DNA of 64,000 nt from Bugula neritina (taxonomy: Eukaryota; Animalia; Bryozoa): NCBI GenBank assembly GCA_964035545.1, contig OZ037767.1, positions 4,852,707-4,916,706 of the forward strand, written 5' to 3'. Each line of letters opens with the position of its first letter. The stretch's first letter is position 1. A program made the position numbers and the translations under genes. Shown piece by piece: positions 1-39,600 of the stretch. Below the pieces are notes generated by a model that did not search any database, had not been told where the DNA came from, and saw only the letters and a list, made by a program, of their open reading frames with translations.

Positions 1-3000
1 ACTCCATGAGCCGGTCGGTGACGTACGAGACCATGAGCATGACAAATAGACCAATCAGCATGCACAGAGTTTTGTACGGGAAATACTGCCGATTAGTCTC
101 GGAGTCGTACCAAGGAAATGCAACGACAGCTTTCCAGTTGAGCAGAGCCTCACCTCCTAGCAATCTCACTGCCAGAGATACAAGGAACCCTGCAGAAACA
201 AATCTCAGTTCTAGAAAATTCCGGAAACAGGAATACAATGTTTCAAGACTGTGACACTACACTGAGCTAAATACAGGCGTCTCTACTTGTATTGGAAGTT
301 AGCAATAATGAAATGAATAATTATAGAGCATCATCTGTACATACTGTAGAGAGCAGCCATAGTCTGGGGGTTAGAGCACTGACTTAGTAAACACGAAGTC
401 ATAGGTTTGAATCCCTGACAAAGGCCATTGGTGATGTTAGCAAGAGCATCCAGTCATAATTTTTGCTGTGTCACATATGAATAATTCCTCAACCCACTTT
501 GAAAAAAACTTTTTCCACCAGGGTTCTGACAGGGGGGAGGGGGGATAGTGACCATAAATTTGCATGAGTTTATTTGTACATACTTTGATTATAGAAAAAC
601 CAGTAGTAGAAGATACAGAAAATACATTAAATAGCACAAAGCAAACAATACACTAACTACACTACATCACACTACACTACACTACACTGCATACATTACG
701 CTGCACTACATTACACACTGCACTACATTGCAATACACTGCACTACATTACACTACATTATATTACACTACTCTACACTGCACTACACTTTTTTCAAATG
801 GACGGTTTGAGAATAGGATACAATATAGGGTAGGCAACTAATATATAATATAATCATGTTCACACAGAAAGACACACTCATTATGCTAATAGTATCACTC
901 AGCTATTTATAACATAGCGAGATCTAATGAAGTGAACTAACCAGTGAGAGATCCGAAAGTGTTGAACCATGAAACGAACATGACGGAGAGGAGTTGGGGG
1001 AAGAGCAGCACATACACAAAGTCTCCACACATGACAAACAGGCCATATACAGTCTGTATGGTTATAGCCAAGACGGCAGCGATAGAACAAAAGACGACAG
1101 CAGCTAATCTCATCACCCATATGACTTCTCTGTCACTAGCCTGCGTAATAGTGTGTTATATTACATGTAGTATTATATAGTATTATGTGCAGTGTATTAT
1201 ATATACTACATGTAGTGTATTATATAGTATTATATGTAGTGTATAATATAGTATTATATGTGGTGTATTATATAGTATTATATGTAGTGTATGTTATAGT
1301 ATATACACTATATCATATACTATATACAATGTATTATATTACAAGCAATATATAATATTGTATGTGGTACATTATATACGATATGACATATTTCAATTAA
1401 TATGTGATATAGTATATTATACAGTATAGTATAGCATAATGTGTATGGTATAATGTAGTATATATACAGTATGATATACAGTAGCAATCTCAGTGTAATA
1501 TATGCTATACTATATACAGCATATAATATCATAGTATTGTAGAATGCATAGTGCAACATAATAGCCCTTGTAACATAACGTAACAGATACCTGGGATATA
1601 GATGCAGGTATTAAGGATAATATAAAGTAACACATACCTGAGGTCTAAACACGGGCTTGTAGACATTCTGGGCAAACATTGTGCTGGAGCTGAGCATAGA
1701 TGAGTCAGCGGATGACATAACGGCAGCAGAGACAGCTCCTAGTCCTATGATAGCCACAACAGGTGGTGTCAGGTACTGCAGCACTAACGGCACTATCAGA
1801 TTAGGCCGTACTGTGCCATCATCCAACACTCCGCTGTATGCAGTCCGGTTCCAGTCTAAAATACCACCAATACGGCCTGGTTAGTATCTCTTGTCAAATA
1901 TTGCTTCGTGGTTAACATTTTGCACTGTGTCTACAGTTATTTTACTTTACATACATCTGATGTAAAAAAGAACTTTTTTGAGTTTTAGCAATTTGGAAAG
2001 GGAGAAAGATTTAGCCCCACACAAAAAAATAATTACACATTTTTGACAGTCCTTGGCTTACTAAAAAGGAATTAAAATCAATGAGCTGTAAACAAGTCAA
2101 ACTGAGCAGAGCTGACCTGTGGAATAGCCTATGGCTCCAATCATCACAGGGGGTATAGCCATTAGCAGACAACCAATACCTCCCAGAAACGAGAGAATTC
2201 GAGCACCATCAGGTGTTCTGCTGGCCAACACTCTTTGGAAGTATACCTGTAACAAGATACGACTAGGTTACTGCAGTCAGTATAGGTCTACCTGTAACAA
2301 GATACGACTAGGTTACTGTAGTCAGTATAGGTCTACCTGTAATCTGGATCTGGGACTTTGTCATTCCCCCAATGTTTATAATTTCTGTTAGAAAATGCTT
2401 TTATTTTTGTCTTTGATGTGTGCATAAATTCCATAGAAATGTTATGTATGTGTAGGAATGATTACATAGTTATGTACCATCAGAATGTTTGCACACTGAG
2501 CATGATGATCACGGGTGCATATGGTGGATGAAGCTTATTATTGTGTAAAGTCTAAACTAAAGGCTTGAATGAAAGGCAAATTTATTGAGAAAGAAGACAA
2601 CTCCTGCCATAATAGATTAATACTGATTTTAAGTCATCGAAGGCAAGACAATTTTATTTAATTAGTAATTAAATTAAAAAGAGCAGCTGTAGTCCAGGGG
2701 TTAGAGCGTTTGCCTAGTAAGCAGGGAGTCATGGGTTCGAACCCAGACAATGGCCATTGGTGATGTTAGGAAGAGCATTCAGTCATAATTGCTCCTGTGT
2801 GACATATGAATAAGTCTTTAGCCTGATTTAATAAAAAAACCTTTTCCATCAGGTTTATAGTTTATAGCGACTATAAACTTGCATGAGTAAGGTTTTTTTA
2901 ATTAAATTATAAAGTTCTGCTGCCCGTACCTGCCAAGGAAGTCCTCCAAACATCAGTAACAGGTAGTCATCAACAAACAAGCCCCAGGACCTGCCTTCCA

Positions 3001-5776
3001 AATAGCCTAACCACCCAACTGTCTCTGATGTAGAGTTTACGGGCACTGAGAACACGTCCCCAACTGCCTCATGATTTATAGCAAATGGTATTGCTGTAAT
3101 CTAAAATATCAACTTTTACATTTTTAAAAAAGCTTCAACTTATTTACAAAGTAATGTGTGGAAGTCATGAGAAGCACAGAATAGCTAGTTAAAGTACAGA
3201 AAAATAATCTAATTGAATTCCAACAAATATAACGTTATACACTGTTGACACTGGAATTTCAAGGCTTCGATCTGTTTAACCAGAGTAACATATTGTACCA
3301 CTATAGTTACACCTATGATTAGTACAATAACATATACCAGCCCTCTAACTTAATATTTCACAGTTTAAGTGTAAAGGATTTAGAAAAAAAGTTATTTTAT
3401 TTATTAAATATAAAAAGAGTCAGGAAAGTTAGAATAACACGTACCAGTCCTGCAGCAATACATAAGAGTTGAATAACATCTGTGTACACAACAGATGCTA
3501 GTCCACCTAACACTACGTACAGTAATGCTACACATGCTGATATGATTACAGATATCCACATTTCTAGACCAATAATCACTGATAGGGTCGAACCTGTAAT
3601 AAGATTCATTACAAAAACTTGAAAATATTTGTCAAAAACACCATCTTCAGGATAATCTTAAAAAAGCCCGTCAGATTTCACTTTGAATTGATGTTCATTG
3701 CATTTTATTATTGAAACCTTGGTCATTTCTTATAAAAATATGCTACTTGTGACATATTTCATTATAAGAATATTAACATCCCTTAAATATGCTTTATTTT
3801 ATAAAAGTTCATGATATAACTGGCCTGACCCAAATGTCAAATGTATGACAAACGCTCGAGACAGCTGACTGTTGGACGACTCACCCAGAGCACTAAGAAT
3901 AGATGCACTCCAAAATATCTCTCCACTCAAGGCGGGGAGAACCAAAACAGCCCCCATCCAGTCTCCCAGTTTCTTCTGAAACGGGTCTATCATAGTTGTA
4001 TATCCAGCTTCCCTCATTGGCTTGGCGAAAAATATTCCTCCTGAAACATTATTTAAAAATTAAAAGAAAATATTTTTAGCAATGTTAGCAATACATATCT
4101 ACAATGTGCGTAGGTTACTAGTGTGGACTAACATTAACGCTAGATGTGTAAGTTGTTATTGGGTGTGTAGGTTAGTACTAGAGATGTAAGTTACTATTTG
4201 GTGTGTAAGTTACTAATTACTACTATGTGTGTAAGTTAATACTCTGTGTATAAATAACAACTAGAAATGTAAGTTACTACTAGAAATGTCAATAACAACT
4301 AAGATGGTAAGTAACAACTACAAATGTAAGCTATTCCTAGAAATGTAAGTTACTACTAGAAATGTAAGTAACTACTAGAAATGTAAGTTACTACTAGATA
4401 TGTAAGTTACAACTTAAGTATGTAAGTTATAGGTGTACCTAGGATGAGACTGATGGAGAAGCCAACTGGTGCCTGGGCCCAGATTAGCCCGGCTCCAGTC
4501 CCACTGACCGAGTTGTAGACCGCTTCAGCAGTGCCATTAATGTAACCTCCACCAACCCAAGTGGCTGTCATTGTGAAAATTCCAACAAACTGTAAACAGA
4601 GTACGAGTATTAATAGTATGTATACAGTCCTGGAATATGCTACTTTTGTGTTTTCCAATACTTTCCTTTATTGATATGTTCTAATCAATGTTTAGCATTT
4701 CAATAATCTTAAAACATCAAAAAATGATATATGAAACAATTTATTACAGGATATCTGCTCAAACATAGCTGGCGATAATTTATAATTTTAATTTACCTCA
4801 TTGAAATTGTCTTCTCAACTGTTCAGTTTAAAGGAGCTTACAGAACGTAATTTAAAATTTGAATCACCACAAAACCTTTCACATAATTTCCTCCAATAAA
4901 AACTCACCACTTGTTTTTTTAGGCAAATCATAAACAAAAAGTAACCCACCCCAGTCAACAAAATTAAACCTAATTTTGTTAGTAGTTTTTTTAAGCTGCA
5001 TAGATCTCTAATTTAACCATGGGCATAATATGAGAGCACAATTCCAACATAAGAATACTGTTCTGACATCTATTCTAGTAACTTTATGAGAAAATAACTC
5101 CTAAATCTAACATATCAACAGTCACATGGTATATTATCTGTCCCTCCCCTAAAGTTGCCTTTATACCTTTACAATTTTCAGTCAGAAATTCAATTTGGCC
5201 GGGTTGAAATTTCTCCGAGTTGCATTGCATTGTAAAAGCCACTCGTAAAAATTTTTGTACTGGGATAACTTAATCGGCCGATTTCAAAATAATACTCAAA
5301 AGGAGTAATAACTCCTTGTGAACATCATTATTTAGTTATGACTTTGGCAATTAGATGACGCACAAGTTTATATGTTAATATAACAATTATCCCTTTTATG
5401 CTGTCAACTTCACCAATTCACGACGTTTACAAAGGGCATCAAATAGCGATTAGGCGAGTCAGATTTCAATTTTAGAAAGTAAGCTTCCGCATCAATATGA
5501 TTTTAACGATTTTCAGTTTGACTATAAAGGGGTACCCAGACGAGTGATATTAACTGAAACTCAGAACTTTTTCCAGTCGAGGTACAAACGCAACTTAACA
5601 CTAGAGTGTTTGCAGGTCACACTCACCATTCCAATATTTCTGCCAGCCAGCATGGTATCTGATGTGCTGGCCTTGGCTTTATTGGACAGCTCTTTCCTTC
5701 CTGCTACGATACCTATCACCAGCATGATGACATAGAAGACCAGCACGGCCACCAACCCCCACACGTTCTCCACCAT
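1..5776 (-). CDS. SLC5A7: High-affinity choline transporter CHT1/SLC5A7-like sodium:solute symporter (spliced, 3' end outside window)
   Basis: Coding exons (- strand): 5776-5627, 4589-4439, 4040-3885, 3593-3445, 3100-2930, 2246-2117, 1855-1638, 1140-942, 189-<1. All junctions are GT-AG with consistent phases; ~504 codons in window. CHT1 hallmark motifs: [97 protein letters not shown]. Orthology versus paralogy is not resolved. Confidence 0.95.
350..570 (+). mobile_element. tRNA-derived SINE copy (family A)
   Basis: gagcagccatagtctgggggttagagc head, degenerate B box ggtttgaatccc, core ggccattggtgatgttagcaagagcatccagtcataa. Flanking direct repeat tgtacatact at 336-345 and 575-584. Confidence 0.85.
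650..790. repeat. (ACTAC)n-type degenerate pentamer microsatellite
   Basis: cactacactacactac... in an SLC5A7 intron. Confidence 0.85.
1148..1560. repeat. AT-rich degenerate minisatellite (tagtattatatgtagtgtatta-like)
   Basis: Visible tandem units in an SLC5A7 intron. Confidence 0.75.
2244..2342. repeat. 45-bp tandem repeat (~2.2 copies) overlapping a splice acceptor
   Basis: tacctgtaacaagatacgactaggttactg(c/t)agtcagtataggtc at 2244 and 2289, partial copy at 2334. Confidence 0.95.
2680..2890 (+). mobile_element. tRNA-derived SINE copy (family A) with intact B box
   Basis: A-box-like tagtccagggg, B box GGTTCGAACCC at 2734-2744, same core and 3' tail gcgactataaacttgcatgagt. TSD-like taattaaatta at 2666-2676 and 2899-2909. 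Confidence 0.88.
4135..4432. repeat. ~19-bp minisatellite (tactactagaaatgtaagt)
   Basis: Tandem degenerate units filling most of an SLC5A7 intron. Confidence 0.85.
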
Positions 5777-5854
5777 GTTGTCACTTCTATTGGTGAGTCA
5801 TACAAACCAATACACCAGCCTGCAAGTAGTGCATAAGTAACAGGCTATATATTA

Positions 5855-10089: not shown

Positions 10090-13000
10090 ATGGCGAAGAG
10101 CATGTCAGTTTGTTACTGTCTGTTAGCATTGTGTCTGGTCATTTCTTGTGTATCTCTCGTCTTGACTTTGCTCATCATAGCCAAGCCTGGGATCCTAATA
10201 CAGAGGTAGGGTGGTCAAGTATTAGCTCTGTAAATACAGTTAGAATTCATACTGGCATATTTTTGTCTTTATCAATAATCAAATAACATGCTGAACTACT
10301 GATATTTATCTAAATTCACGTTAAATATAGGCCAAATTTCTAAAAGAAATTTGTTTGCATTTATATCAAAAAGAGATGTAAATTATATATTCTATTTATA
10401 TTTATGTTATATACTCATTTTTGTTATATTCTGTAAATTTTCGGAATTGAATATTTGGTAGAACAAAAAGAATACTTTGTCATGAATATTTTGGTTGTCT
10501 TTTCTTCGCAATTATAATATTAAGTGATGGTATTTTAATTTTATATCAAATATTTTCATTATTTATTACTTTATTATTTTAGTATAATATATTAAAATTG
10601 ATTATGCATTCCTTGGACCCCACATTTGTTTCGTATGACTATATTAGCAGTTATAGCACACTAATGCAGAATGCAAATGAACAAAGCGCAAAAACAGCAG
10701 ACAATACCGTAGCCAATGAATACACAATGCAGACACAGAGTGGGCACAACTCTCAAGAAGGACGCAAAGTTTATGTGTTTGCTTATGATGTGCCTTGGGA
10801 GCAATACCAATATGTGTAAGTAACGCGAGATTTGGTCGTTTGCAACAATTATAACAGACTTCGCTGAAATAAAAATGTGAACTGAATGTAAAAATAAACT
10901 GGAACCCTAAAGATTATTTGATGAATATTTAATAGAAAAATCAGGGAAAGGTTACATAGTTTAGGATACTTCGTAATTGAAATGTTCAGACTTGATTTGG
11001 TCACGCTAATATAAACTAATATGTACTAGGTTTTATCTTATACTTATTTAAATATTATTAATCAATAATTTAATAAAATGCAACAAAAAGGTAAATAAAA
11101 GAAACAATAAATCGAAGATAACTTTTTCTAAAGAAACTGAAAACTCAGCAAAGAAATTAGAGATGCTGCATAAAAATTAGTCAATTTTATTACAAATTAT
11201 TTTTACTCAGAGAAAATGAAATAAACAAAAGAAAATGAATTGCAGGACAGCAGAAGGCGAGTTAAGAGGACTATCTGTAGATGTGGTAGACGCAGTCTGC
11301 AATCATGCTATGAAGAGTTGCCAGCACATTGTAGTGCCCATAGAATACTGTTGGAATAATGAAGACTTGATAGGCAGTGGTAAGGTAACTTTCAGAGCCA
11401 CGTGTAAATATATAATTCATCATTTGAATCCTAAACTGTTTTTATCTTGTAGTTTTTTATGAAGACAGAGAAATATTTTAATTATTTAAATAAAGTAAAG
11501 CATAAGCCATACTTTATTGCTGATTAGTGGCCTCCGGCTGCACCGTTTCTAAACCACTCTAATGTGAAACCTTCACCTCAACAATTTGACTTGGTTAATA
11601 CAAAATAGGTGGTCCACCATTAAGCAGTTTATTTTCAAGTGTGAAATGCATTTTGTAGGGTTGTTGGGTAAATGGTTTGACTCTTGTGCGGTTTTTCTCA
11701 AGACAAAAGAAAGAAAAAATGTCTTTAGATTTTCTGGAAGCTTCTATAAACCAAAAAGAGGGCAATTCTATTTTAAGTCTGACAGATCCATATCAGTGGA
11801 GAAGCTAGATGGCCTAATTTTGGGTAAGTGAATGACCAATCACAGGATTAGTATAGGTGTACACTTTTAGACTAAGCAATAGATAACTTAGGCCATCACC
11901 ACTATGCAATAACTCAAACAGGAAATAATAACATTAGTATATATATATGAAATTAAAAGGCTATTTTTACAGGTCTTTATAATTAAAATTGATCAGCTAT
12001 GATAAATGCTAGCTTTTGACAGCTTTTGAGTAACTGCTTCCTATTTTCAATTTTGCTTTCCTATTAATATTTTATGGTTGTGTCTGTGACATAACAATAA
12101 AACTATAATTTTGTTTTTATTAGCTGTAGATTATTTATTTGTAGCTGCATGCACCTTGTCTCTAAAAAGTCTCAATAAACTTGGGAGACTAAAATTAAGC
12201 AAAAATATTGAATCTTTACCTGATGCTTTGACCTCTTTAATGGTCAATAGAATGTGTGAATTGTTTCAGGAGTGAGATCTCATTGGTTCATCAGTGAAAA
12301 CTGTCTACATCAGCACAACATCAAGACAACAGAAACACTAACAGCAGCAAACTATGCTGAGCTATATGAAATGATAGCCAATGACACGGTATATATAATG
12401 CAACAATAAACTTGCATAATAATTAGGTATAGTAAAACTAGTATAGTAGATTAAGTATAAGAAATTAGGTATAGTAAATTAAGTATAGTAGATTAAGTAT
12501 AGTAGTTTAAGTATAGTAAATTAAGTATAAGAAATTAAGTATAGTAGATTAAGTATAGTAAATTAAGTATAAGAAATTAAGTATAGTAAATTAAGTATAG
12601 TAGATTAAGTATAGTAGATTAAGTATAGTAAATTAAGTATAAGAAATTAAGTATAGTAAATTAAGTATAGTAACTCAAATATACTAAATTAAGTATAGTA
12701 AATTAAGTATAGTAAATTAAGTATAGTAATTTAAGTGTAGTAAATTAAGTATTATATGATAAACTATAAAAAAAATAAACATAATAAATCAGGTACAACA
12801 AATTGAGTACAACAAGTTAAATAAATTAGGCTAATAAAAAACTTAAATACCTATGTTCTTACTTTTTATTTGTTATGAGATAAAAATAGGTTTTCCCATC
12901 ATGGGCACAGTGCAGCAGAAGACAGATGCGTTCATTTAGGTTCCCTATTGGTCCATTTACCAAACTATGTACAATAAACTTAACATAATAAATTACATGC

Positions 13001-13126
13001 AATAAATTAAGTATAATAAATGAGTGTAATAAATGAAAAATAATGATAAAGAGAGCAAGTGTAAGCATAGAGAAATAAAAGAAAGATATATATACATGAA
13101 TGTATAGCGCAGCAGTTGTATATATG

Positions 13127-13173
<47 letters not shown>

Positions 13174-14415
13174 CTATGTCTATGTCTATGTATATGTATA
13201 TGTATATGTGTATGTATAGTGAAGCATTTGCAATACAGTAACAAGTGAGCTATGCTATGTGACTGCTGAAAACTCATATTTTCTTACAGGTAGATATAGC
13301 CTTTGTGGAGGAAGATGTGTTTAAGAGTAAGGAGCTGCTAATATCCACCTCCATAACGTTTGATTGCTCTCTGGGGGGATCTGGCATCATGCACTTAGTC
13401 AACAGTGGTACGTCCCATACTGTCTGTTATGATACAAAGATATCTCTCTGCAAAGTTAATTTATAATATTCAAAATCCATGAATCAAATAATATGTATTA
13501 TGATGGTCACTTTTCACTGCAGTGGTCCTTCACGGTGGCGGGTACATAATATGTATTATAAGGTAACTAAATAGTAAAACTTTGCAAATGAAGATAAACT
13601 ATAGAGAAGAGTATACAGAACTACACCATCAATATAAGACCAAACAAAATACATGTAAGCATGGAAACATTTCACAGAGTATAGCTCTTAGAGAGAATAG
13701 ATTTACAATGTCACATATATATAATTCTGACCTATAAACTCTTATTAAAATAACAAACATGTTACTAAACTCAGAAAATAGATATTTGAGAAATTTAGCG
13801 CAAAGCCAAATTTAGAAAATTTAACCCTTAATTAATCGAGGGAACTACTTACATTTGTATGCTAAATCTAACAAACTAAATATAATAAACTAAGTATAGC
13901 AAACTAAGTATAGTAAGCCTTAGAAAGCTATGCTTTACCAGCCAGTTAAGGCAAACCAAATACATTAAGCCAAATATAATGAAAAAAAATATATAGTAAA
14001 CTATTTTTGACAAAACTTGACAGCCCTAGAAGTTTGAATATACTATCTATAAGGTTCAGTTACTACACCCCTGAAGTAAAACTAATACCTGGTATAACAA
14101 TATTACGAACTTGCCTATTTTAATGCTTCTAAATACACTAAATATAAACAAATAACAAAATAAATTGAGTAAAACAAATGATTAAAATGTAAAGGCAGCA
14201 AATTTCAAATACACAAACCTGTTCTAAATTATAGATTTAGATTTTTTAAAAAACCGTATGTTCAGTAGAGAAGCGAGTGTAACCTTGTACTGTTTTCTAC
14301 TGTAGATATACCTCTGTGGTTTGAACCAGCATTTGAAGACATAAAGAGAAGAGGCGTATTCATGGACCTGTGTAAAAAATATAAAAATGTTACCTCATCA
14401 TGTTTGCTGACTTGA
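10090..14415 (+). CDS. Membrane-anchored bacterial-type family 3 solute-binding protein (SBP_bac_3/PBP2, HisJ/ArgT/ArtI-like), 308 aa, 7 coding exons
   Basis: Exons 10090-10205, 10651-10815, 11246-11379, 11659-11823, 12270-12388, 13290-13407, 14306-14415 (927 nt, phases consistent, TGA at 14413-14415). N-terminal hydrophobic anchor LLALCLVISCVSLVLTLLII and a polar linker, then FAYDVPWEQYQYVTAEGELRGLSVDVVDAVCNHAMKSCQ...GLLGKWFD...KTKERKNVFRFSGSFY...LDGLILGV...YAELYEMIANDTVDIAFVEE...FEPAFEDIKRRGVFMDLCKKY, co-linear with polar amino-acid binding proteins. AATAAA at 14619. Confidence 0.85.
12418..12752. repeat. 14-bp minisatellite (aattaagtatagta)
   Basis: More than 20 tandem units in intron 5 of the SBP-like gene. 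Confidence 0.92.
13118..13218. repeat. (GTATAT)n/(GTCTAT)n hexamer microsatellite
   Basis: Directly visible. Confidence 0.92.
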
Positions 14416-14946: not shown

Positions 14947-17750
14947 ATGGAGTGCTGTCGAATAACTAAACAATCAACACATACTTTTCAACTGGTGAGT
15001 TATGTCTTGACATGAGGCCTTGGGTATCTACTTAACGACAAAATAAAAACACTCTAACACATATTATAAAGCAGTTCGATTACAGCTACAATTTATAAAT
15101 TTTCCAAAACAGTGGCAATCACTATGCTCAGGAAGCAGTGTAAGTTTTAAAAACAATTGTGATAGTTTGAAGAAAAACATAATAAATTACATGCATGTAG
15201 ATTGACTGATGTCCGTATCTTATTTAATATGTTCAACAATTTTATTATAATATACATATATTTATGACTATGAGTAATAAAATCATATTTCTGCAAAACA
15301 GAAATTTAATAATTAAAAAATTAATTTAGTTCAGGATAAAATTAAACAGAAGTTATAATCTGCCAGTGTTTTTCCAATATTAGGTTGCTAATAAATATTT
15401 TCCTGTTATTTTAAGAATACTGTTAACTACTATTCTGGCTTAGGAATAGCAATTAATATTTTACAAAATTATTGAGCAAACAAAAGTGAAAAATTAAAAA
15501 ATTATTGAAAAGCTTAGCAGAAATGAATCATGAATAACTAAAAAAAATGATCGTTTGCAGTAGGTTCAACAAGATTGCAGACCCATGACTGAGTCAAAAA
15601 GCTCAAAGCCACCATGTGGGAAGCTGCTAGATGTCAACACATTGCCGGGCTTCATGGAAACTAGTAAGCATTTTATCTCAAGAGTATGTATTAATAGGAC
15701 AGGAGCAATTGACAGTATGATATTACTTAAAATACTTGAAAACCAGTTTTAAGCATTTCAAGTATTTATCAAGTCTTCAGAACTGTCCAAAAAACTTAGT
15801 TTGCACTTTCAATATATTACACTAATAAATTAATGCAACTACTTTTATTACTTTATTAAAATACTTGAACTAATGATTACAGGTGAGGCAAAAAATCTCT
15901 CTCCGGATATAAGCCAGCAGCCATCAAACAATAAGTGCCATGGCAATGCCAACACTAACAAAAACAGCAAACTGGCAAACAGAAACCAGGAAACACAAAG
16001 CGACAGCGGTTCACTTCACTCATACCAGGAGTTGGTAAAAGCTCCACATCGAGTTTTACTATGCCATACAATGACCCCATCTAATAAAGAATCACTTTTT
16101 GGCCAAATTGAAAAGAAAGTTTCCAACACAACGCAGTCAAATGATGATGCTCCAAAGAGTACAACTGATAATTCAATAGTTACATGTATAATCGATCCGT
16201 CCAAGCCATATTCAGAGGAATCTGAAACTAACAAGCCATTACAAGAAACTACTTCAACAACTAGTGAAATTAAAAGAACTAGTGAAATTGAAAAACCCAG
16301 TAAAATTGAAAAAACCAGTGAAATTGCAAAAAGCAATGAAATTAAAAAACCCTATGAAATTGAAAAACCCAGTGAAATTAAAAAACCGAGTGAAATTGAA
16401 ACAACCAGTGAGAATAAAAAAACCAGTGAAATTGAAAAACCTAGTGACATTGAAAAAACACCCAATGTTCAACCCCAGACTAATGCTTCTCCAAAAGCTA
16501 TAAAATGCTCTTCAAAAATTTTGGTTCGAAAGAAAAAAACGATAGGTCGTCAAAGCAAAAACAAACTCCCTAGCAGCTCCAGGTTAGCATCAAATATCTC
16601 ATCTAAACGTTCCTCCAATTCAGAACGATGTCAACCATGTTCACTGACTGGACAAAGAAACAACAAATTTTCAATTTCAGCAGATCATAAAGTATGCCCT
16701 GAAAAATTGAGGAAAAAGCTTACAGTAATTGAACACAACATGTTTAGGCAGATGAAGCATGGTGCGGTAAAAGAAAGATGTACTATGAATAACACGCAAC
16801 CTAAATTAAACTGCCAACGGGATCGCCATGCCTCAGCATCAGTACATAGTGGTGCCAAAATACACATAAAAACTTCTAAGAAGTCAACTGCTAGTAGTGT
16901 CACAAGTTTCAACAAAAGGGCTTCCTACATAGGCCAAAGACCAAATAATTTAAAATGTCCACAAATTTCCACTTCTGCTCGGCAGTGTACGAAAGAGGAT
17001 ATAAACCCTACAAACAAAGAAAAGAAGAAAAAACTTGAGTCTTCTTCCACAAGACTACCTGTAAACTCAACAACTCCCATAATATACGAGAAAACTCAGA
17101 AAAAGCATGAAAACCTAGAAAGTTTGCAAGAGAAACAAAGCACTTTACCAACCTCATCAGAAGAGTCTTCCGAAAACGAAATAAGCCTGAGCTCTTTAGT
17201 TCCTTTAAGAACTAGAAAAAGATCTTCCATTCCATTTTCAAAGGCGATACCTCCGAAACCTTTAAGTCAACAAAACTCAAAAAACAGCTTTGACCAAAAT
17301 AGAAATGAGACCAAAAATAAAACGAAAAAAGATGAACACAAGTTTGGTACTGAAATTCAAAACCAAAAGACTAAATCTGACGCTGTGAAAGATGGGCTTG
17401 AAAAGAAGCCAGTGATCAATAAAATCAAGCATAACACTTATGAAACTGCAATGGTCCAAAAAGCACTACCTAACAGAGGCACAACAGCTCCAAACAAAAC
17501 AAAAAGTTTGTCTGCAATCTACAACAACCAAAGTCTAAATGCACCAAATAATCAGCAAACTTATACTAATTGCAGAGAAGTTAATGTTGATCAAGAAATA
17601 CTAATTGATGAACCTAACAGTGCTTATGCAACTCTTAAAAAACGAAGACTACAAATAAATTCCTGGCATAATGCTAGCCCAGAAAATCAAGATATCAGTT
17701 CTGAGATCATCCCACCTGAAGTGCCAGTTAAAAACTATAATAGAATCTAA
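14947..17750 (+). CDS. Uncharacterised low-complexity, probably disordered K/S/T/N-rich protein (~671 aa, 3 exons)
   Basis: Large terminal exon 15883-17750 is the 625-aa ORF. Upstream exons 14947-14994 (ATG...CTG|GTGAGT) and 15564-15663 (TAG|...A|GTAAGC) join in phase, giving 2016 nt. Several AATAAA at ~17880-18015. No recognisable folded domain. The first two exons are less certain than the large one. Confidence 0.7.
16260..16460 (+). repeat. Coding 18-bp tandem repeat, 11 copies of (T/P)SEIEK
   Basis: TSEIKR TSEIEK PSKIEK TSEIAK SNEIKK PYEIEK PSEIKK PSEIET TSENKK TSEIEK PSDIEK. Confidence 0.92.
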
Positions 17751-36600: not shown

Positions 36601-39600
36601 ATACGTCTGATTCAAACAGCAGTTTCAGGTAAGATAGGTTGTGCTGGAGCAAACTTTCCCTGTGAGGCTAAGATGCCCAGCGTGATACCTATTATGACTA
36701 TAAGTGTCACAACTCCCACAGCTAATCCTATTATAATATAGTTCAAGTTGCTGAGTTGTGTCACTGCTTTATCTGTCTGTTCATCGTCTGTTTGACCAGC
36801 AATCGAAGGTGGAGGTACCGGCTTCTTTGTCGGCATCTTTGTGGTTTCGAAATATTTTACTGTAGGAATAATCGTAGTGGTCCTTGGTAATGTAGTTTTA
36901 GTTGGCACTTTGGTGCTTGTTTTAGCAGTTGTTGGGATTGTTGTGGTAGGTGTGGTGGTTGTAGTAGTAGTTGTAGTTGCTTTAGTAGTAGTTGTAGTTG
37001 GTGTAGTGGTGGTTGTAGTAGTGGTGGTGGTGGTTGGTGTAGTGGTGGTTGTAGTTGGTGTAGTGGTGGTTGTAGTTGGTGTAGTGGTGGTAGTAGTTGG
37101 TGTAGTTGTGGTAGTAGTTATGGGCTTCTTTATGGTGGTTGTGGATTTAAGTGTGGTTGTGCTTGTAGTTTCTGGAAACAGTGTAACATCAACACCATGA
37201 TCTGGAATGTCTATATCTCCTCTATTTTGGGCCTCCACAACAACTGTAAATATAAACAAAACAATGTTAAACATTTAAACAAAAGTGTAAACATAGGACA
37301 TTGCCTGAGGGGCTTTCTACTTCTGTAAACTTGTATAGCAGCATTATCAGTAGAATAATTTTGTCTATTGTTTCAACTTCTGGAGATTCTAGTGAGCTTA
37401 GACCGCCCATGGCGAAGTTTATTACAATAATACCGGATAATAATAGAATAACAAGACTTGAGGACAAGATGATGGATTAGCAGATTGCATGAAACAGATA
37501 GTCAACATTTCAATTATCAAAACAATTTGAGAAATGTTAGCATAGTCCTAGGACGTAGACAGTAGGTCACTGTGTGCGGTAGGCTATGACATCATAGCTG
37601 TTGATTCTCTGAATTAGAAAAAAATCTGTTTCCTGTTACGCCATATATTTTCACATAATTACACACATTATACATGCAGTATATTACTACAATCATAACA
37701 AGCAGTCACTGTGAAATGGTCTCGGGTAACAGGCAGGCCTACAGTGTTTTATGAATGGGGTTGCCCCTCGTGGAGTATGATATGTATTCATTATCTGGCA
37801 CTGTAATAGGCACTGTAACATCTTGTCCCCAACACACACAGATACTATGATCATGATAAAGAATAAGATCATTAATCTGCTAGACTTTACAAAAGGCATG
37901 CAGTGCAATCAAATCTTTCTACTACCTTTTTTATTAACATAATTTATCATTTGCCGAATGAACATCTCAATGCAACGAGTGTCAACCAGGTTTTTGAGAA
38001 CACTGACACCAGTTACAGGTGATGCAGGTGTTACAGGGACATGGCATTTAATTCACCTGGATGCAATAAACAAGCCAAAAATACAATGAATAAAAAAACT
38101 CTGCATTCATATTATATAATGCATACTTTTCGGAGAAAAAAACAATGTTACTGGAAAATATTTCATCTTTGCTCCAGTTAAACTACCCCCAGACATATAT
38201 TTATAGGAGAAACAGAAGGGTAGAGGGGTGGGACTGAAACAATTCAATTAGAAAATAACAATTTCAAATTTGTATATTTAACTAAAATGTAGCCGAATAG
38301 AATGTGGCAGGACGATTGATGCGTGTAATGATTATTATAATTCATAAACACTGGACTTATGTTGATTCACTGGCGTCAATCTGCCTCAGGCTACTAGGTT
38401 ACACAACACTGCACACATGCGTACACACATGTATGGGAGTTGCTAAGGCTAGATGACCTTACATAGTGGTCAATTCACTCGGTTGAATTATGGGTTAGAA
38501 CTTAGACTACCACCAGTAATTCTACCACACGTTTATAATTCATTCGACCATTCAAGTGCAGCAGCTGAGAAACTGCTTGTAATACTGGTTGATGTGGTAC
38601 TGCAGTACTCCTTCTACCACCGTAACAGACCTTCAAATCAGAGACTCTAAAATGGAGACTCTAGTCACTAGTATATTGGTTACTAAATCATAAGTTCTGG
38701 AATAGGGATTAAGCTCATGTTCAAACAATAACTTGCACCACAATTATTCAACATGTCATTGCCTAACATCAGTTGGAAATTGTTTTTGCAGTCATTTTCT
38801 ATTTGGCAGCATTTGGCTGCCAGAGTGGCTTTGTACAACATAACAACTACCAGCACTAAAACACATAGGATAGTATGCAGTTAAACCTACAACCAACCAG
38901 AAAACATTTCCACACTTCTGACTGGACTATTTTCTAACTAAAAACAAAGCAAATTGCACAATAATTGAGACTAAGTCATAAACATCTCTGTCCAGGAAAT
39001 TGACCATTGCCAAACATTTGATGTCAAACTACACAGCCATTCTATCAATCACGTACTTGGAAACTAAATAAATCATTAAAAGGATTGCAAGCAGAAGGAG
39101 TTCTATCCTTTGACCTTACTTTTGGAGAGAGCAAATGTCACAATCCTAAACACTAATGATAATGTTGCTTGCAACTTCTTCATGGCTGTTCAGATAATTA
39201 ACTCTGCCAGAGTTCTATAACTCGTAGATGACTACCAAGTTTGCTATGGTATAACCTAGCCCCTCTTTTTCTTACTCTCTCAATCTATCTAGGTAAAATT
39301 GCATGGGTTAGGATTTTAATTTTGCCTAAAACTTCACTCAATGCCCCTCCCCTCTCTTACAACTATGAACAACCTGTTCCAGACTGTCACTTTGTGATAA
39401 GCATCTTTGACTGTGTGAGAAGTAGAAGCCAGACTCCATGGTGTTAAAACTCTTATCATTAATTTACTATAAGTTCTACCATGTTTAGGAATTATGAAAT
39501 ATTTGCACCCATTCGCCTCAACACCACAACTATTGGTTGGCAAGCCTAACTGAATTGCCACAAAAGATCCGGTTCGAAGTTTTATAGCTACAAGTTGAAT

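What the first reader, a model, noticed from the sequence alone, without database searches (positions are those of the whole stretch)
10090..14415. Intron-containing, membrane-tethered bacterial-type amino-acid solute-binding protein in an animal genome
Seen: seven GT-AG exons splice into a clean 308-aa ORF that the ORF track shows only as scraps. Knowledge (HisJ/ArgT/ArtI sequences recalled from memory): the ectodomain aligns end to end with family-3 periplasmic binding proteins. YDVPW corresponds to TDPTY (D11/Y14), GELRGLSVD to GELVGFDID, C-x6-C to the HisJ/ArgT C38-C45 disulfide, TKER to TEKR (R77, which binds the ligand carboxylate), LDGLILGV to LKGKRVGV, VDIAFVEE to IDAAFQDE (D161), and the C-terminal AFEDIKRRGVFMDLCKKY helix also matches. 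Unlike an iGluR ligand-binding domain it is not split by channel helices. It has an N-terminal signal/anchor, extra Cys and N-glycosylation sequons (NDT, NVT). Inference: an old horizontally acquired and domesticated gene acting as a cell-surface amino-acid scavenger or sensor. Animals lack the ABC importers such proteins normally serve.
Basis: partly seen in the sequence, partly recalled or inferred. Interest (0 to 1): 0.9.

Follow-up and report, generated by a model that had tools for sequence, protein, structure and literature searches.

The report
Bacterial-type amino-acid binding protein in invertebrates
This marine animal (probably the bryozoan Bugula) has a real, intron-containing gene for a cell-surface protein shaped like the clamshell proteins that bacteria use to catch amino acids; it belongs to an old family shared with snails that is listed in databases but for which I found no study.

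Summary
Gene model confirmed: seven GT-AG exons give 309 aa (not 308). Variants are mostly synonymous. All seven exons match, in order, one uninterrupted ORF from a public sample (L040), and an orthologue (L038) shares all six introns. The family passes Pfam SBP_bac_3; the orthologue's model (pLDDT 92.6) matches LAO/HisJ best, iGluR domains less. It is not lineage-specific: a motif scan found about 20 relatives, and gastropods (Patella, Littorina, Babylonia, Batillaria, Elysia) carry database-annotated members, two of which I checked share four intron positions. The animal proteins form one group with eight conserved cysteines, six nearly absent from the bacterial set. No donor was found, so transfer is inferred, and predates the bryozoan-mollusc split. 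D11, Y14, R77 and D161 equivalents are present here, but S72 and T121 are lost and only R77 is invariant family-wide; the ligand is unproven. No ABC permease in the genome. Best reading: membrane-anchored amino-acid trap serving a host transporter or receptor. No RNA reads were available. Searches were exon by exon; the joined search was left out. An earlier scan note covers this same stretch only.

The parts
10090..10205 (+). Exon 1: start codon, short Cys-containing N-terminus and ~25-residue hydrophobic signal-anchor; phase-2 donor
   Evidence: 46% identical to L040 residues 44-78; same donor position in L038
10648..10815 (+). Exon 2: polar Ser/Thr/Gln/Asn stalk, then first strand and YDVPW loop (D86 = HisJ D11, W89 = Y14)
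   Evidence: its donor position and phase are shared with Patella and Littorina
11246..11379 (+). Exon 3: GELRG strand, helix with C113-x6-C120 (HisJ C38/C45) and family-specific C130
   Evidence: only NCBIfam hit TIGR01096, E 0.033; Atlas SBP_bac_3 0.91; 35 bits against family profile
11659..11823 (+). Exon 4: family motif WFDSC (C149), T155-x-x-R158 (HisJ R77), first hinge strand
   Evidence: only NCBIfam hit PRK11917, E 0.069; motif scan; both borders shared with gastropods
12270..12388 (+). Exon 5: second lobe, H199-W200-F201 in place of HisJ G119-T120-T121, C206, sequon N232
   Evidence: 11.8 bits against family profile, 0 of 500 shuffles reach it
13290..13407 (+). Exon 6: VDIAFVEE strand (E241 = HisJ D161), C260, second hinge strand
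14306..14415 (+). Exon 7: C-terminal helices, C296, C306, sequon N301, stop codon
1..5783 (-). Neighbour, head-to-head (4.3 kb away): intron-containing SLC5A7/CHT1-like sodium symporter; link to the binding protein not shown
   Evidence: E 5e-19 to human CHT1; tandem paralogue just outside the window

Best explanation
A functional host gene of an old invertebrate family of stand-alone family-3 (PBP2) solute-binding proteins of bacterial type. The product is a type II membrane protein: a few cytoplasmic residues, one anchor helix, a flexible stalk and a two-lobed clamshell ectodomain held by probably four disulfides and glycosylated. It closes on a small amino acid or amino-acid-like solute (carboxylate on R158, amino group on E241, side chain between D86, W89 and W200; a basic or bulky amino acid is the best guess) and, having no ABC permease and no signalling tail, holds the solute at the cell surface for a separate host sodium-coupled transporter. 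Shown: gene structure, selection, family, fold of the orthologue, residue equivalences, absence of permease. Inferred: topology, disulfides, ligand, partner, and origin by an ancient transfer from bacteria before the bryozoan-mollusc split.
For: Gene and selection. Family and fold: PF00497 above cut-off in 6 of 9 relatives, 25 of 26 alignment members hit it; profile vs PDB top 60 all bacterial solute-binding proteins or their reconstructed ancestors, HisJ E 8.7e-17; model pLDDT 92.6, Foldseek top hits LAO E 1e-16, TM about 0.7, VIA Z 22. Pocket mapping through the profile; R77 equivalent in 28 of 28 animal domains. No PF00528 permease in the genome, controls 14 of 14. Four shared intron positions with two gastropods. 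Animal group separate from 25 bacterial proteins, 100/100.
Against: S72 and T121 hydroxyls and G119 are replaced (L153, F201, H199); D11, Y14 and D161 equivalents vary across the family, so ligands may differ by subfamily or not be amino acids. Many relatives appear secreted, not anchored. No expression data, no partner, no binding data. No bacterial donor: best bacterial scores about 60-80 bits, no motif match in GTDB.
Confidence: 0.42

Rival explanations
1. Same fold and ligand class, but it works in chemical sensing: a tethered ligand-presenting co-receptor (or buffer) for a GPCR or ion channel on sensory cells or larvae.
For: Family-3 domains serve as sensor modules in kinases and channels (hits 3h7m, BvgS, GluR0); pocket residues diversify between subfamilies and paralogues; tandem expansions in Patella and Elysia.
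Against: No cytoplasmic tail or channel segment; single copy in this genome, unlike typical chemosensory repertoires.
Confidence: 0.22
2. A sequestering sponge: it binds a nutrient or a toxic small molecule in mucus or at the surface to withhold it from microbes or from the animal's own receptors, as transferrin and saxiphilin do with a related fold (own knowledge).
For: Disulfide-rich extracellular form, secreted and tandem two-domain relatives, one with a long His-rich extension.
Against: No direct evidence; the anchored form here and the retained R77 fit amino-acid capture equally well.
Confidence: 0.14
3. Partner of the adjacent CHT1-like symporter: it binds choline or a betaine through aromatic residues (W89, W200, F201) and shares a promoter region with the transporter.
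For: Head-to-head arrangement 4.3 kb apart; aromatic residues at pocket positions.
Against: No SLC5 gene within 10 kb of four gastropod members; the genome has many SLC5 loci and at least four CHT1-like ones; flanks of close orthologues are too short to test; choline has no carboxylate for the invariant Arg.
Confidence: 0.08
4. The domain has become an ectoenzyme, as cyclohexadienyl dehydratase did from this same family.
For: Such enzymes are among the profile and fold matches; the canonical pocket is remodelled.
Against: No polar pocket residue except the Arg is invariant, which is unlike a catalytic site.
Confidence: 0.06
5. Origin rival: the family derives from a eukaryotic glutamate-receptor ligand-binding domain that lost its channel, or from an older eukaryotic gene lost elsewhere, not from a transfer into animals.
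For: iGluR domains share the fold (Z 16-18.7; prokaryotic GluR0 20.2); no donor found; the tree is unrooted and has no iGluR or protist sequences.
Against: Profile finds no iGluR in the top 60 PDB matches nor in this genome at E up to 1; PF10613 best E 0.018 in 5 of 26 against PF00497 3.5e-18 in 25; iGluR exon segments score 5-10 bits against a mean of 14 for bacterial ones (bacterial set pre-selected); C38/C45 pair is shared with HisJ/LAO.
Confidence: 0.12

Closest known systems
Bacterial polar amino-acid binding proteins, Pfam PF00497 / TIGR01096 (HisJ, ArgT/LAO, ArtJ, GlnP domains)
   Same: Two-lobed PBP2 fold over the whole ectodomain, uninterrupted domain, C38-C45 pair, T-x-x-R77, and here D11, aromatic 14 and acidic 161.
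   Different: 13-20% identity in structural alignments; introns; six further cysteines; an insertion of about ten residues before the WxDxC motif; S72/T121 lost; anchor helix and stalk; no ABC permease or ATPase partner.
Database-annotated animal 'Solute-binding protein family 3/N-terminal domain-containing' proteins (XP_070186626 Littorina, XP_076441274 Babylonia 'L-arginine-binding protein-like', XP_050403986 and KAK6180147 Patella, KAK7508140 Batillaria, KAK3800063 and RUS90140 Elysia)
   Same: Same family: eight-cysteine pattern, GL-x-x-x-W-[FY]-D-x-C motif, invariant Arg, four shared intron positions (tested in Patella and Littorina).
   Different: Those have short signal-like N-termini or two domains in tandem and a different pocket (Arg/Lys at 14, Pro/Ala at 161, Arg at 162); this subfamily has a long anchor, a stalk, YDVPW and an extra intron. 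Names are automatic; no functional paper found in 10 searches.
Ionotropic glutamate receptor ligand-binding domains (GluR0, AMPA/NMDA, plant GLR)
   Same: Same fold class and the conserved carboxylate-binding Arg.
   Different: No S1/S2 split, no channel, weaker sequence and structure scores.
Transferrin / saxiphilin (own knowledge)
   Same: Animal, extracellular, disulfide-rich PBP2-fold binders; one relative is labelled 'Transferrin-like domain' in UniRef.
   Different: No transferrin hit in Pfam, PDB profile or the top 50 fold matches.

Membership tests
SBP_bac_3 (PF00497) fold family | Match to PF00497 above the curated cut-off | tested here: inconclusive
The close orthologue L040 scores 35 bits against 26.4; exons 3 and 4 hit only family-3 NCBIfam models, weakly; exon 3 hits SBP_bac_3 clusters in the Atlas.
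SBP_bac_3 (PF00497) fold family | Two-lobed PBP2 fold with two hinge strands | tested here: met
   On the orthologue P0006:89-325: pLDDT 92.6, LAO best Foldseek match, TM about 0.7, VIA Z 22; not folded for the window protein itself.
HisJ/ArgT-type amino-acid ABC binding proteins | Carboxylate-binding Arg77 | tested here: met
   R158; invariant in 28 of 28 animal and 25 of 25 bacterial domains.
HisJ/ArgT-type amino-acid ABC binding proteins | Asp161 and Asp11/Tyr14 contacts | tested here: met
   E241, D86, W89 in this gene, L040 and L038; not conserved across the wider family.
HisJ/ArgT-type amino-acid ABC binding proteins | Ser72 and Thr121 hydroxyls, Gly119 | tested here: not met
   L153, F201, H199.
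HisJ/ArgT-type amino-acid ABC binding proteins | Cognate ABC permease and ATPase | tested here: not met
   No PF00528 match in the genome; neighbours are host genes.
HisJ/ArgT-type amino-acid ABC binding proteins | Measured amino-acid binding | not testable with these tools
   Needs recombinant protein.
Invertebrate eight-cysteine SBP3 family | Eight conserved ectodomain cysteines and W-[FY]-D-x-C...T-x-x-R motif | tested here: met
   C113, 120, 130, 149, 206, 260, 296, 306; 26-28 of 28 animal domains have each, six of them 0-3 of 25 in bacteria.
Invertebrate eight-cysteine SBP3 family | Shared intron positions | tested here: met
   Introns 2-5 match Patella and Littorina in position and phase; all six match L038.
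Ionotropic glutamate receptors | S1/S2 halves split by channel helices; PF10613/PF00060 | tested here: not met
   One hydrophobic segment only, at the N-terminus; PF10613 best E 0.018.
Horizontally acquired gene | Nested inside a bacterial clade in a rooted, well-sampled tree | tested here: inconclusive
   Animal group 100/100 against 25 pre-selected bacterial proteins, unrooted, no donor, no protist or iGluR rows.

The most novel reading that the evidence does not exclude
Aquatic invertebrates inherited, from one early transfer, a whole undescribed family of secreted and membrane-tethered bacterial-type solute-binding proteins that act as high-affinity front ends for host sodium-coupled transporters or receptors, that is, binding-protein-dependent capture of dissolved amino acids or related solutes in animals.
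Probability: 0.3. Interest if true: 0.85.

Novelty: new variant of a known kind. Interest (0 to 1): 0.55.

Why it matters
Soft-bodied marine invertebrates take up and respond to dissolved amino acids at very low concentrations (established physiology, own knowledge), and animals are thought to lack binding-protein-dependent uptake. A conserved, extracellular, disulfide-stabilised family-3 protein gives a concrete candidate that can be expressed and screened for ligands in weeks. The family is ancient, diversified in its pocket and, as far as my searches reach, unstudied. The surprise is tempered because members are already auto-annotated in mollusc genomes and no function is shown.

Tried and rejected
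Exon-wise Pfam and PDB sequence searches gave nothing useful; exon searches of the large protein collections returned only genomic ORFs of the same or a sibling species; Atlas search with exon 4 gave no usable hit; protein-seeded metagenome scan found nothing. Contamination rejected: 32-Mb contig, host-like introns, host neighbours, even coverage. Pseudogene rejected: open frame and synonymous excess. Lineage-specific recent transfer rejected: shared introns with gastropods. PF00497 and TIGR01096 hits elsewhere in the genome are iGluR exons, not paralogues. The three GTDB motif matches are chance, out of frame or unrelated. Single-sequence fold of P0021 failed (pLDDT 31) and was not used. Ten literature searches and the hemichordate genome paper (PMC4729200 main text) gave no description of the family; its supplement was not held. 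The joined spliced protein was not sent to any search or fold tool; it was translated in a script only to check the frame and count sites.

Full report
Observation. The protein has one hydrophobic segment (about residues 7-31), a polar stalk, eight cysteines in the ectodomain and two sequons. No RNA run holds the stretch; the one run found is DNA and shows no joints. Splicing is therefore supported indirectly. Listed exon variants in that run are 9 synonymous to 3 non-synonymous. Two haplotypes about 87% identical overall keep every splice site they cover and show synonymous excess. One of them comes from a record whose name carries AY690838, the accession of the Bugula neritina mitochondrial genome (PMC2678162), so the animal is probably Bugula neritina or a sibling species (inference).

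Method note. The joined translation was made only inside scripts to check the frame and count sites. Whole-domain tests were run on relatives that the tools returned.

What the exons are. Alone they give no Pfam hit, but among 18,950 NCBIfam models exon 3 hits only TIGR01096 and exon 4 only PRK11917, both family-3 binding proteins, weakly and in the right order; the Atlas places exon 3 with SBP_bac_3 clusters at 0.91. A degenerate DNA pattern drawn from exon 4 found 27 metagenome stretches, 20 of which encode clear relatives, and nothing real in 185,579 prokaryotic genomes. One, L040, is an uninterrupted ORF that all seven exons match in order at 35-52% identity. Another, L038, is a genomic orthologue with the same start and all six introns at the same position and phase. 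Exons 3-7 score against the family profile above all 500 shuffles each; exon 2 is marginal (9 of 500) and exon 1 lies outside the profile.

Family and fold. Relatives pass the PF00497 cut-off. The family profile finds only bacterial solute-binding proteins, mostly polar amino-acid binders, and their reconstructed ancestors in its best 60 PDB matches. The AlphaFold model of the L040 ectodomain is confident (pLDDT 92.6) and matches LAO, ArtJ-type and NocT proteins best; glutamate-receptor domains follow at lower Z. In this genome the profile finds only this gene, whereas PF00497 finds iGluR exons.

Range and age. The profile retrieves named proteins from Elysia, Littorina, Babylonia, Batillaria and Patella, labelled 'Solute-binding protein family 3' or 'L-arginine-binding protein-like'; this word-seeded search is not a census. 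Introns 2-5 of the window gene sit at the same position and phase in Patella and Littorina, so the gene already had introns in the common ancestor of bryozoans and molluscs. The organisms behind the other metagenome hits could not be identified with the tools; from memory two of the samples are coral metatranscriptomes and two contigs resemble echinoderm proteins, which would make the family older, but this is unverified. In a tree, 28 domains of the family form one side of a 100/100 branch against 25 bacterial proteins; the tree is unrooted, the bacterial set is small and pre-selected, the unnamed rows were labelled animal by inference, and L040 has a long branch. The family carries eight conserved cysteines, six of them absent or rare in the bacterial set. 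Bacterial-type ancestry is supported over an iGluR origin, but a donor is not identified and older eukaryotic inheritance is not excluded.

Pocket. But L153, H199, W200 and F201 replace S72, G119, T120 and T121. Across the family only the Arg is invariant; gastropod members have basic residues at 14 and 162 and no acid at 161. The closest orthologues keep YDVPW, the Arg and the Glu. This fits a carboxylate-bearing ligand in all members and an amino acid in this subfamily, with specificity diversified.

Context. The genome has no ABC-importer permease. The head-to-head neighbour is a CHT1/SLC5A7-like symporter with a tandem paralogue behind it, noted earlier by the scan. No SLC5 gene lies near four gastropod members, the genome has many SLC5 loci, and close orthologues have flanks too short to test, so the linkage is unsupported.

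Mechanism. Most likely a type II anchored clamshell that captures an amino acid or similar solute at the cell surface and serves a separate host transporter (0.42); a sensory co-receptor (0.22), a sequestering sponge (0.14), a choline/betaine partner of the neighbour (0.08) and an enzyme (0.06) are rivals. Topology, disulfides, ligand and partner are inferred.

Verdict. It works like a HisJ/LAO protein in structure but is not a member of an ABC import system. Members are auto-annotated in databases, yet ten literature searches found no description; the library lacks many subscription papers. New variant of a known kind; interest 0.55.

Noticed in passing
window 1-5783 (-) and L078 1324-8401 (G000:C3:4842800-4852700): Two tandem CHT1/SLC5A7-like choline-transporter genes with the same nine exons, 61-90% identical per exon; two or three more CHT1-like loci elsewhere in the genome.
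   Followed up: partly
window 14947-14994 and 15873-17750 (+): A probable next gene starts about 530 bases after the stop: short ATG exon with a GT donor, then a 625-codon low-complexity Lys/Ser/Thr/Glu-rich frame with short EIEKPS-like repeats and no Pfam hit.
   Followed up: no
window 36612-37274 (-): Single-exon 220-aa mucin-like type I membrane protein: signal peptide, Thr/Pro-rich stalk, one transmembrane helix (weak Endomucin hit).
   Followed up: no
window 12421-12752 and 13117-13218: Intron 5 holds a 14-bp tandem repeat (about 24 copies) and a 6-bp repeat; the 14-bp unit recurs in intron 6.
   Followed up: no
L023 274-1620 (-): Family member with a signal peptide and a ~200-residue His/Asp/Ser-rich repeat region before the binding domain; possibly metal- or surface-binding.
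   Followed up: no
L019, P0003, P0004, P0005, P0017, P0020; L046, L077: Two-domain tandem members and clustered paralogues in gastropods (Patella, Elysia); an 811-aa neighbour in Elysia chlorotica also carries SBP_bac_3 domains.
   Followed up: partly
L016 3466-4149 (-), L039 761-1444 (+): Genomic members with most of the domain in one long exon; they keep an intron before the first conserved Cys that gastropods also have and the window gene lacks.
   Followed up: partly
G000:C185:8843-10060: Intronless full-length sodium:solute symporter on a small contig, probably a bacterial contig in the assembly.
   Followed up: no
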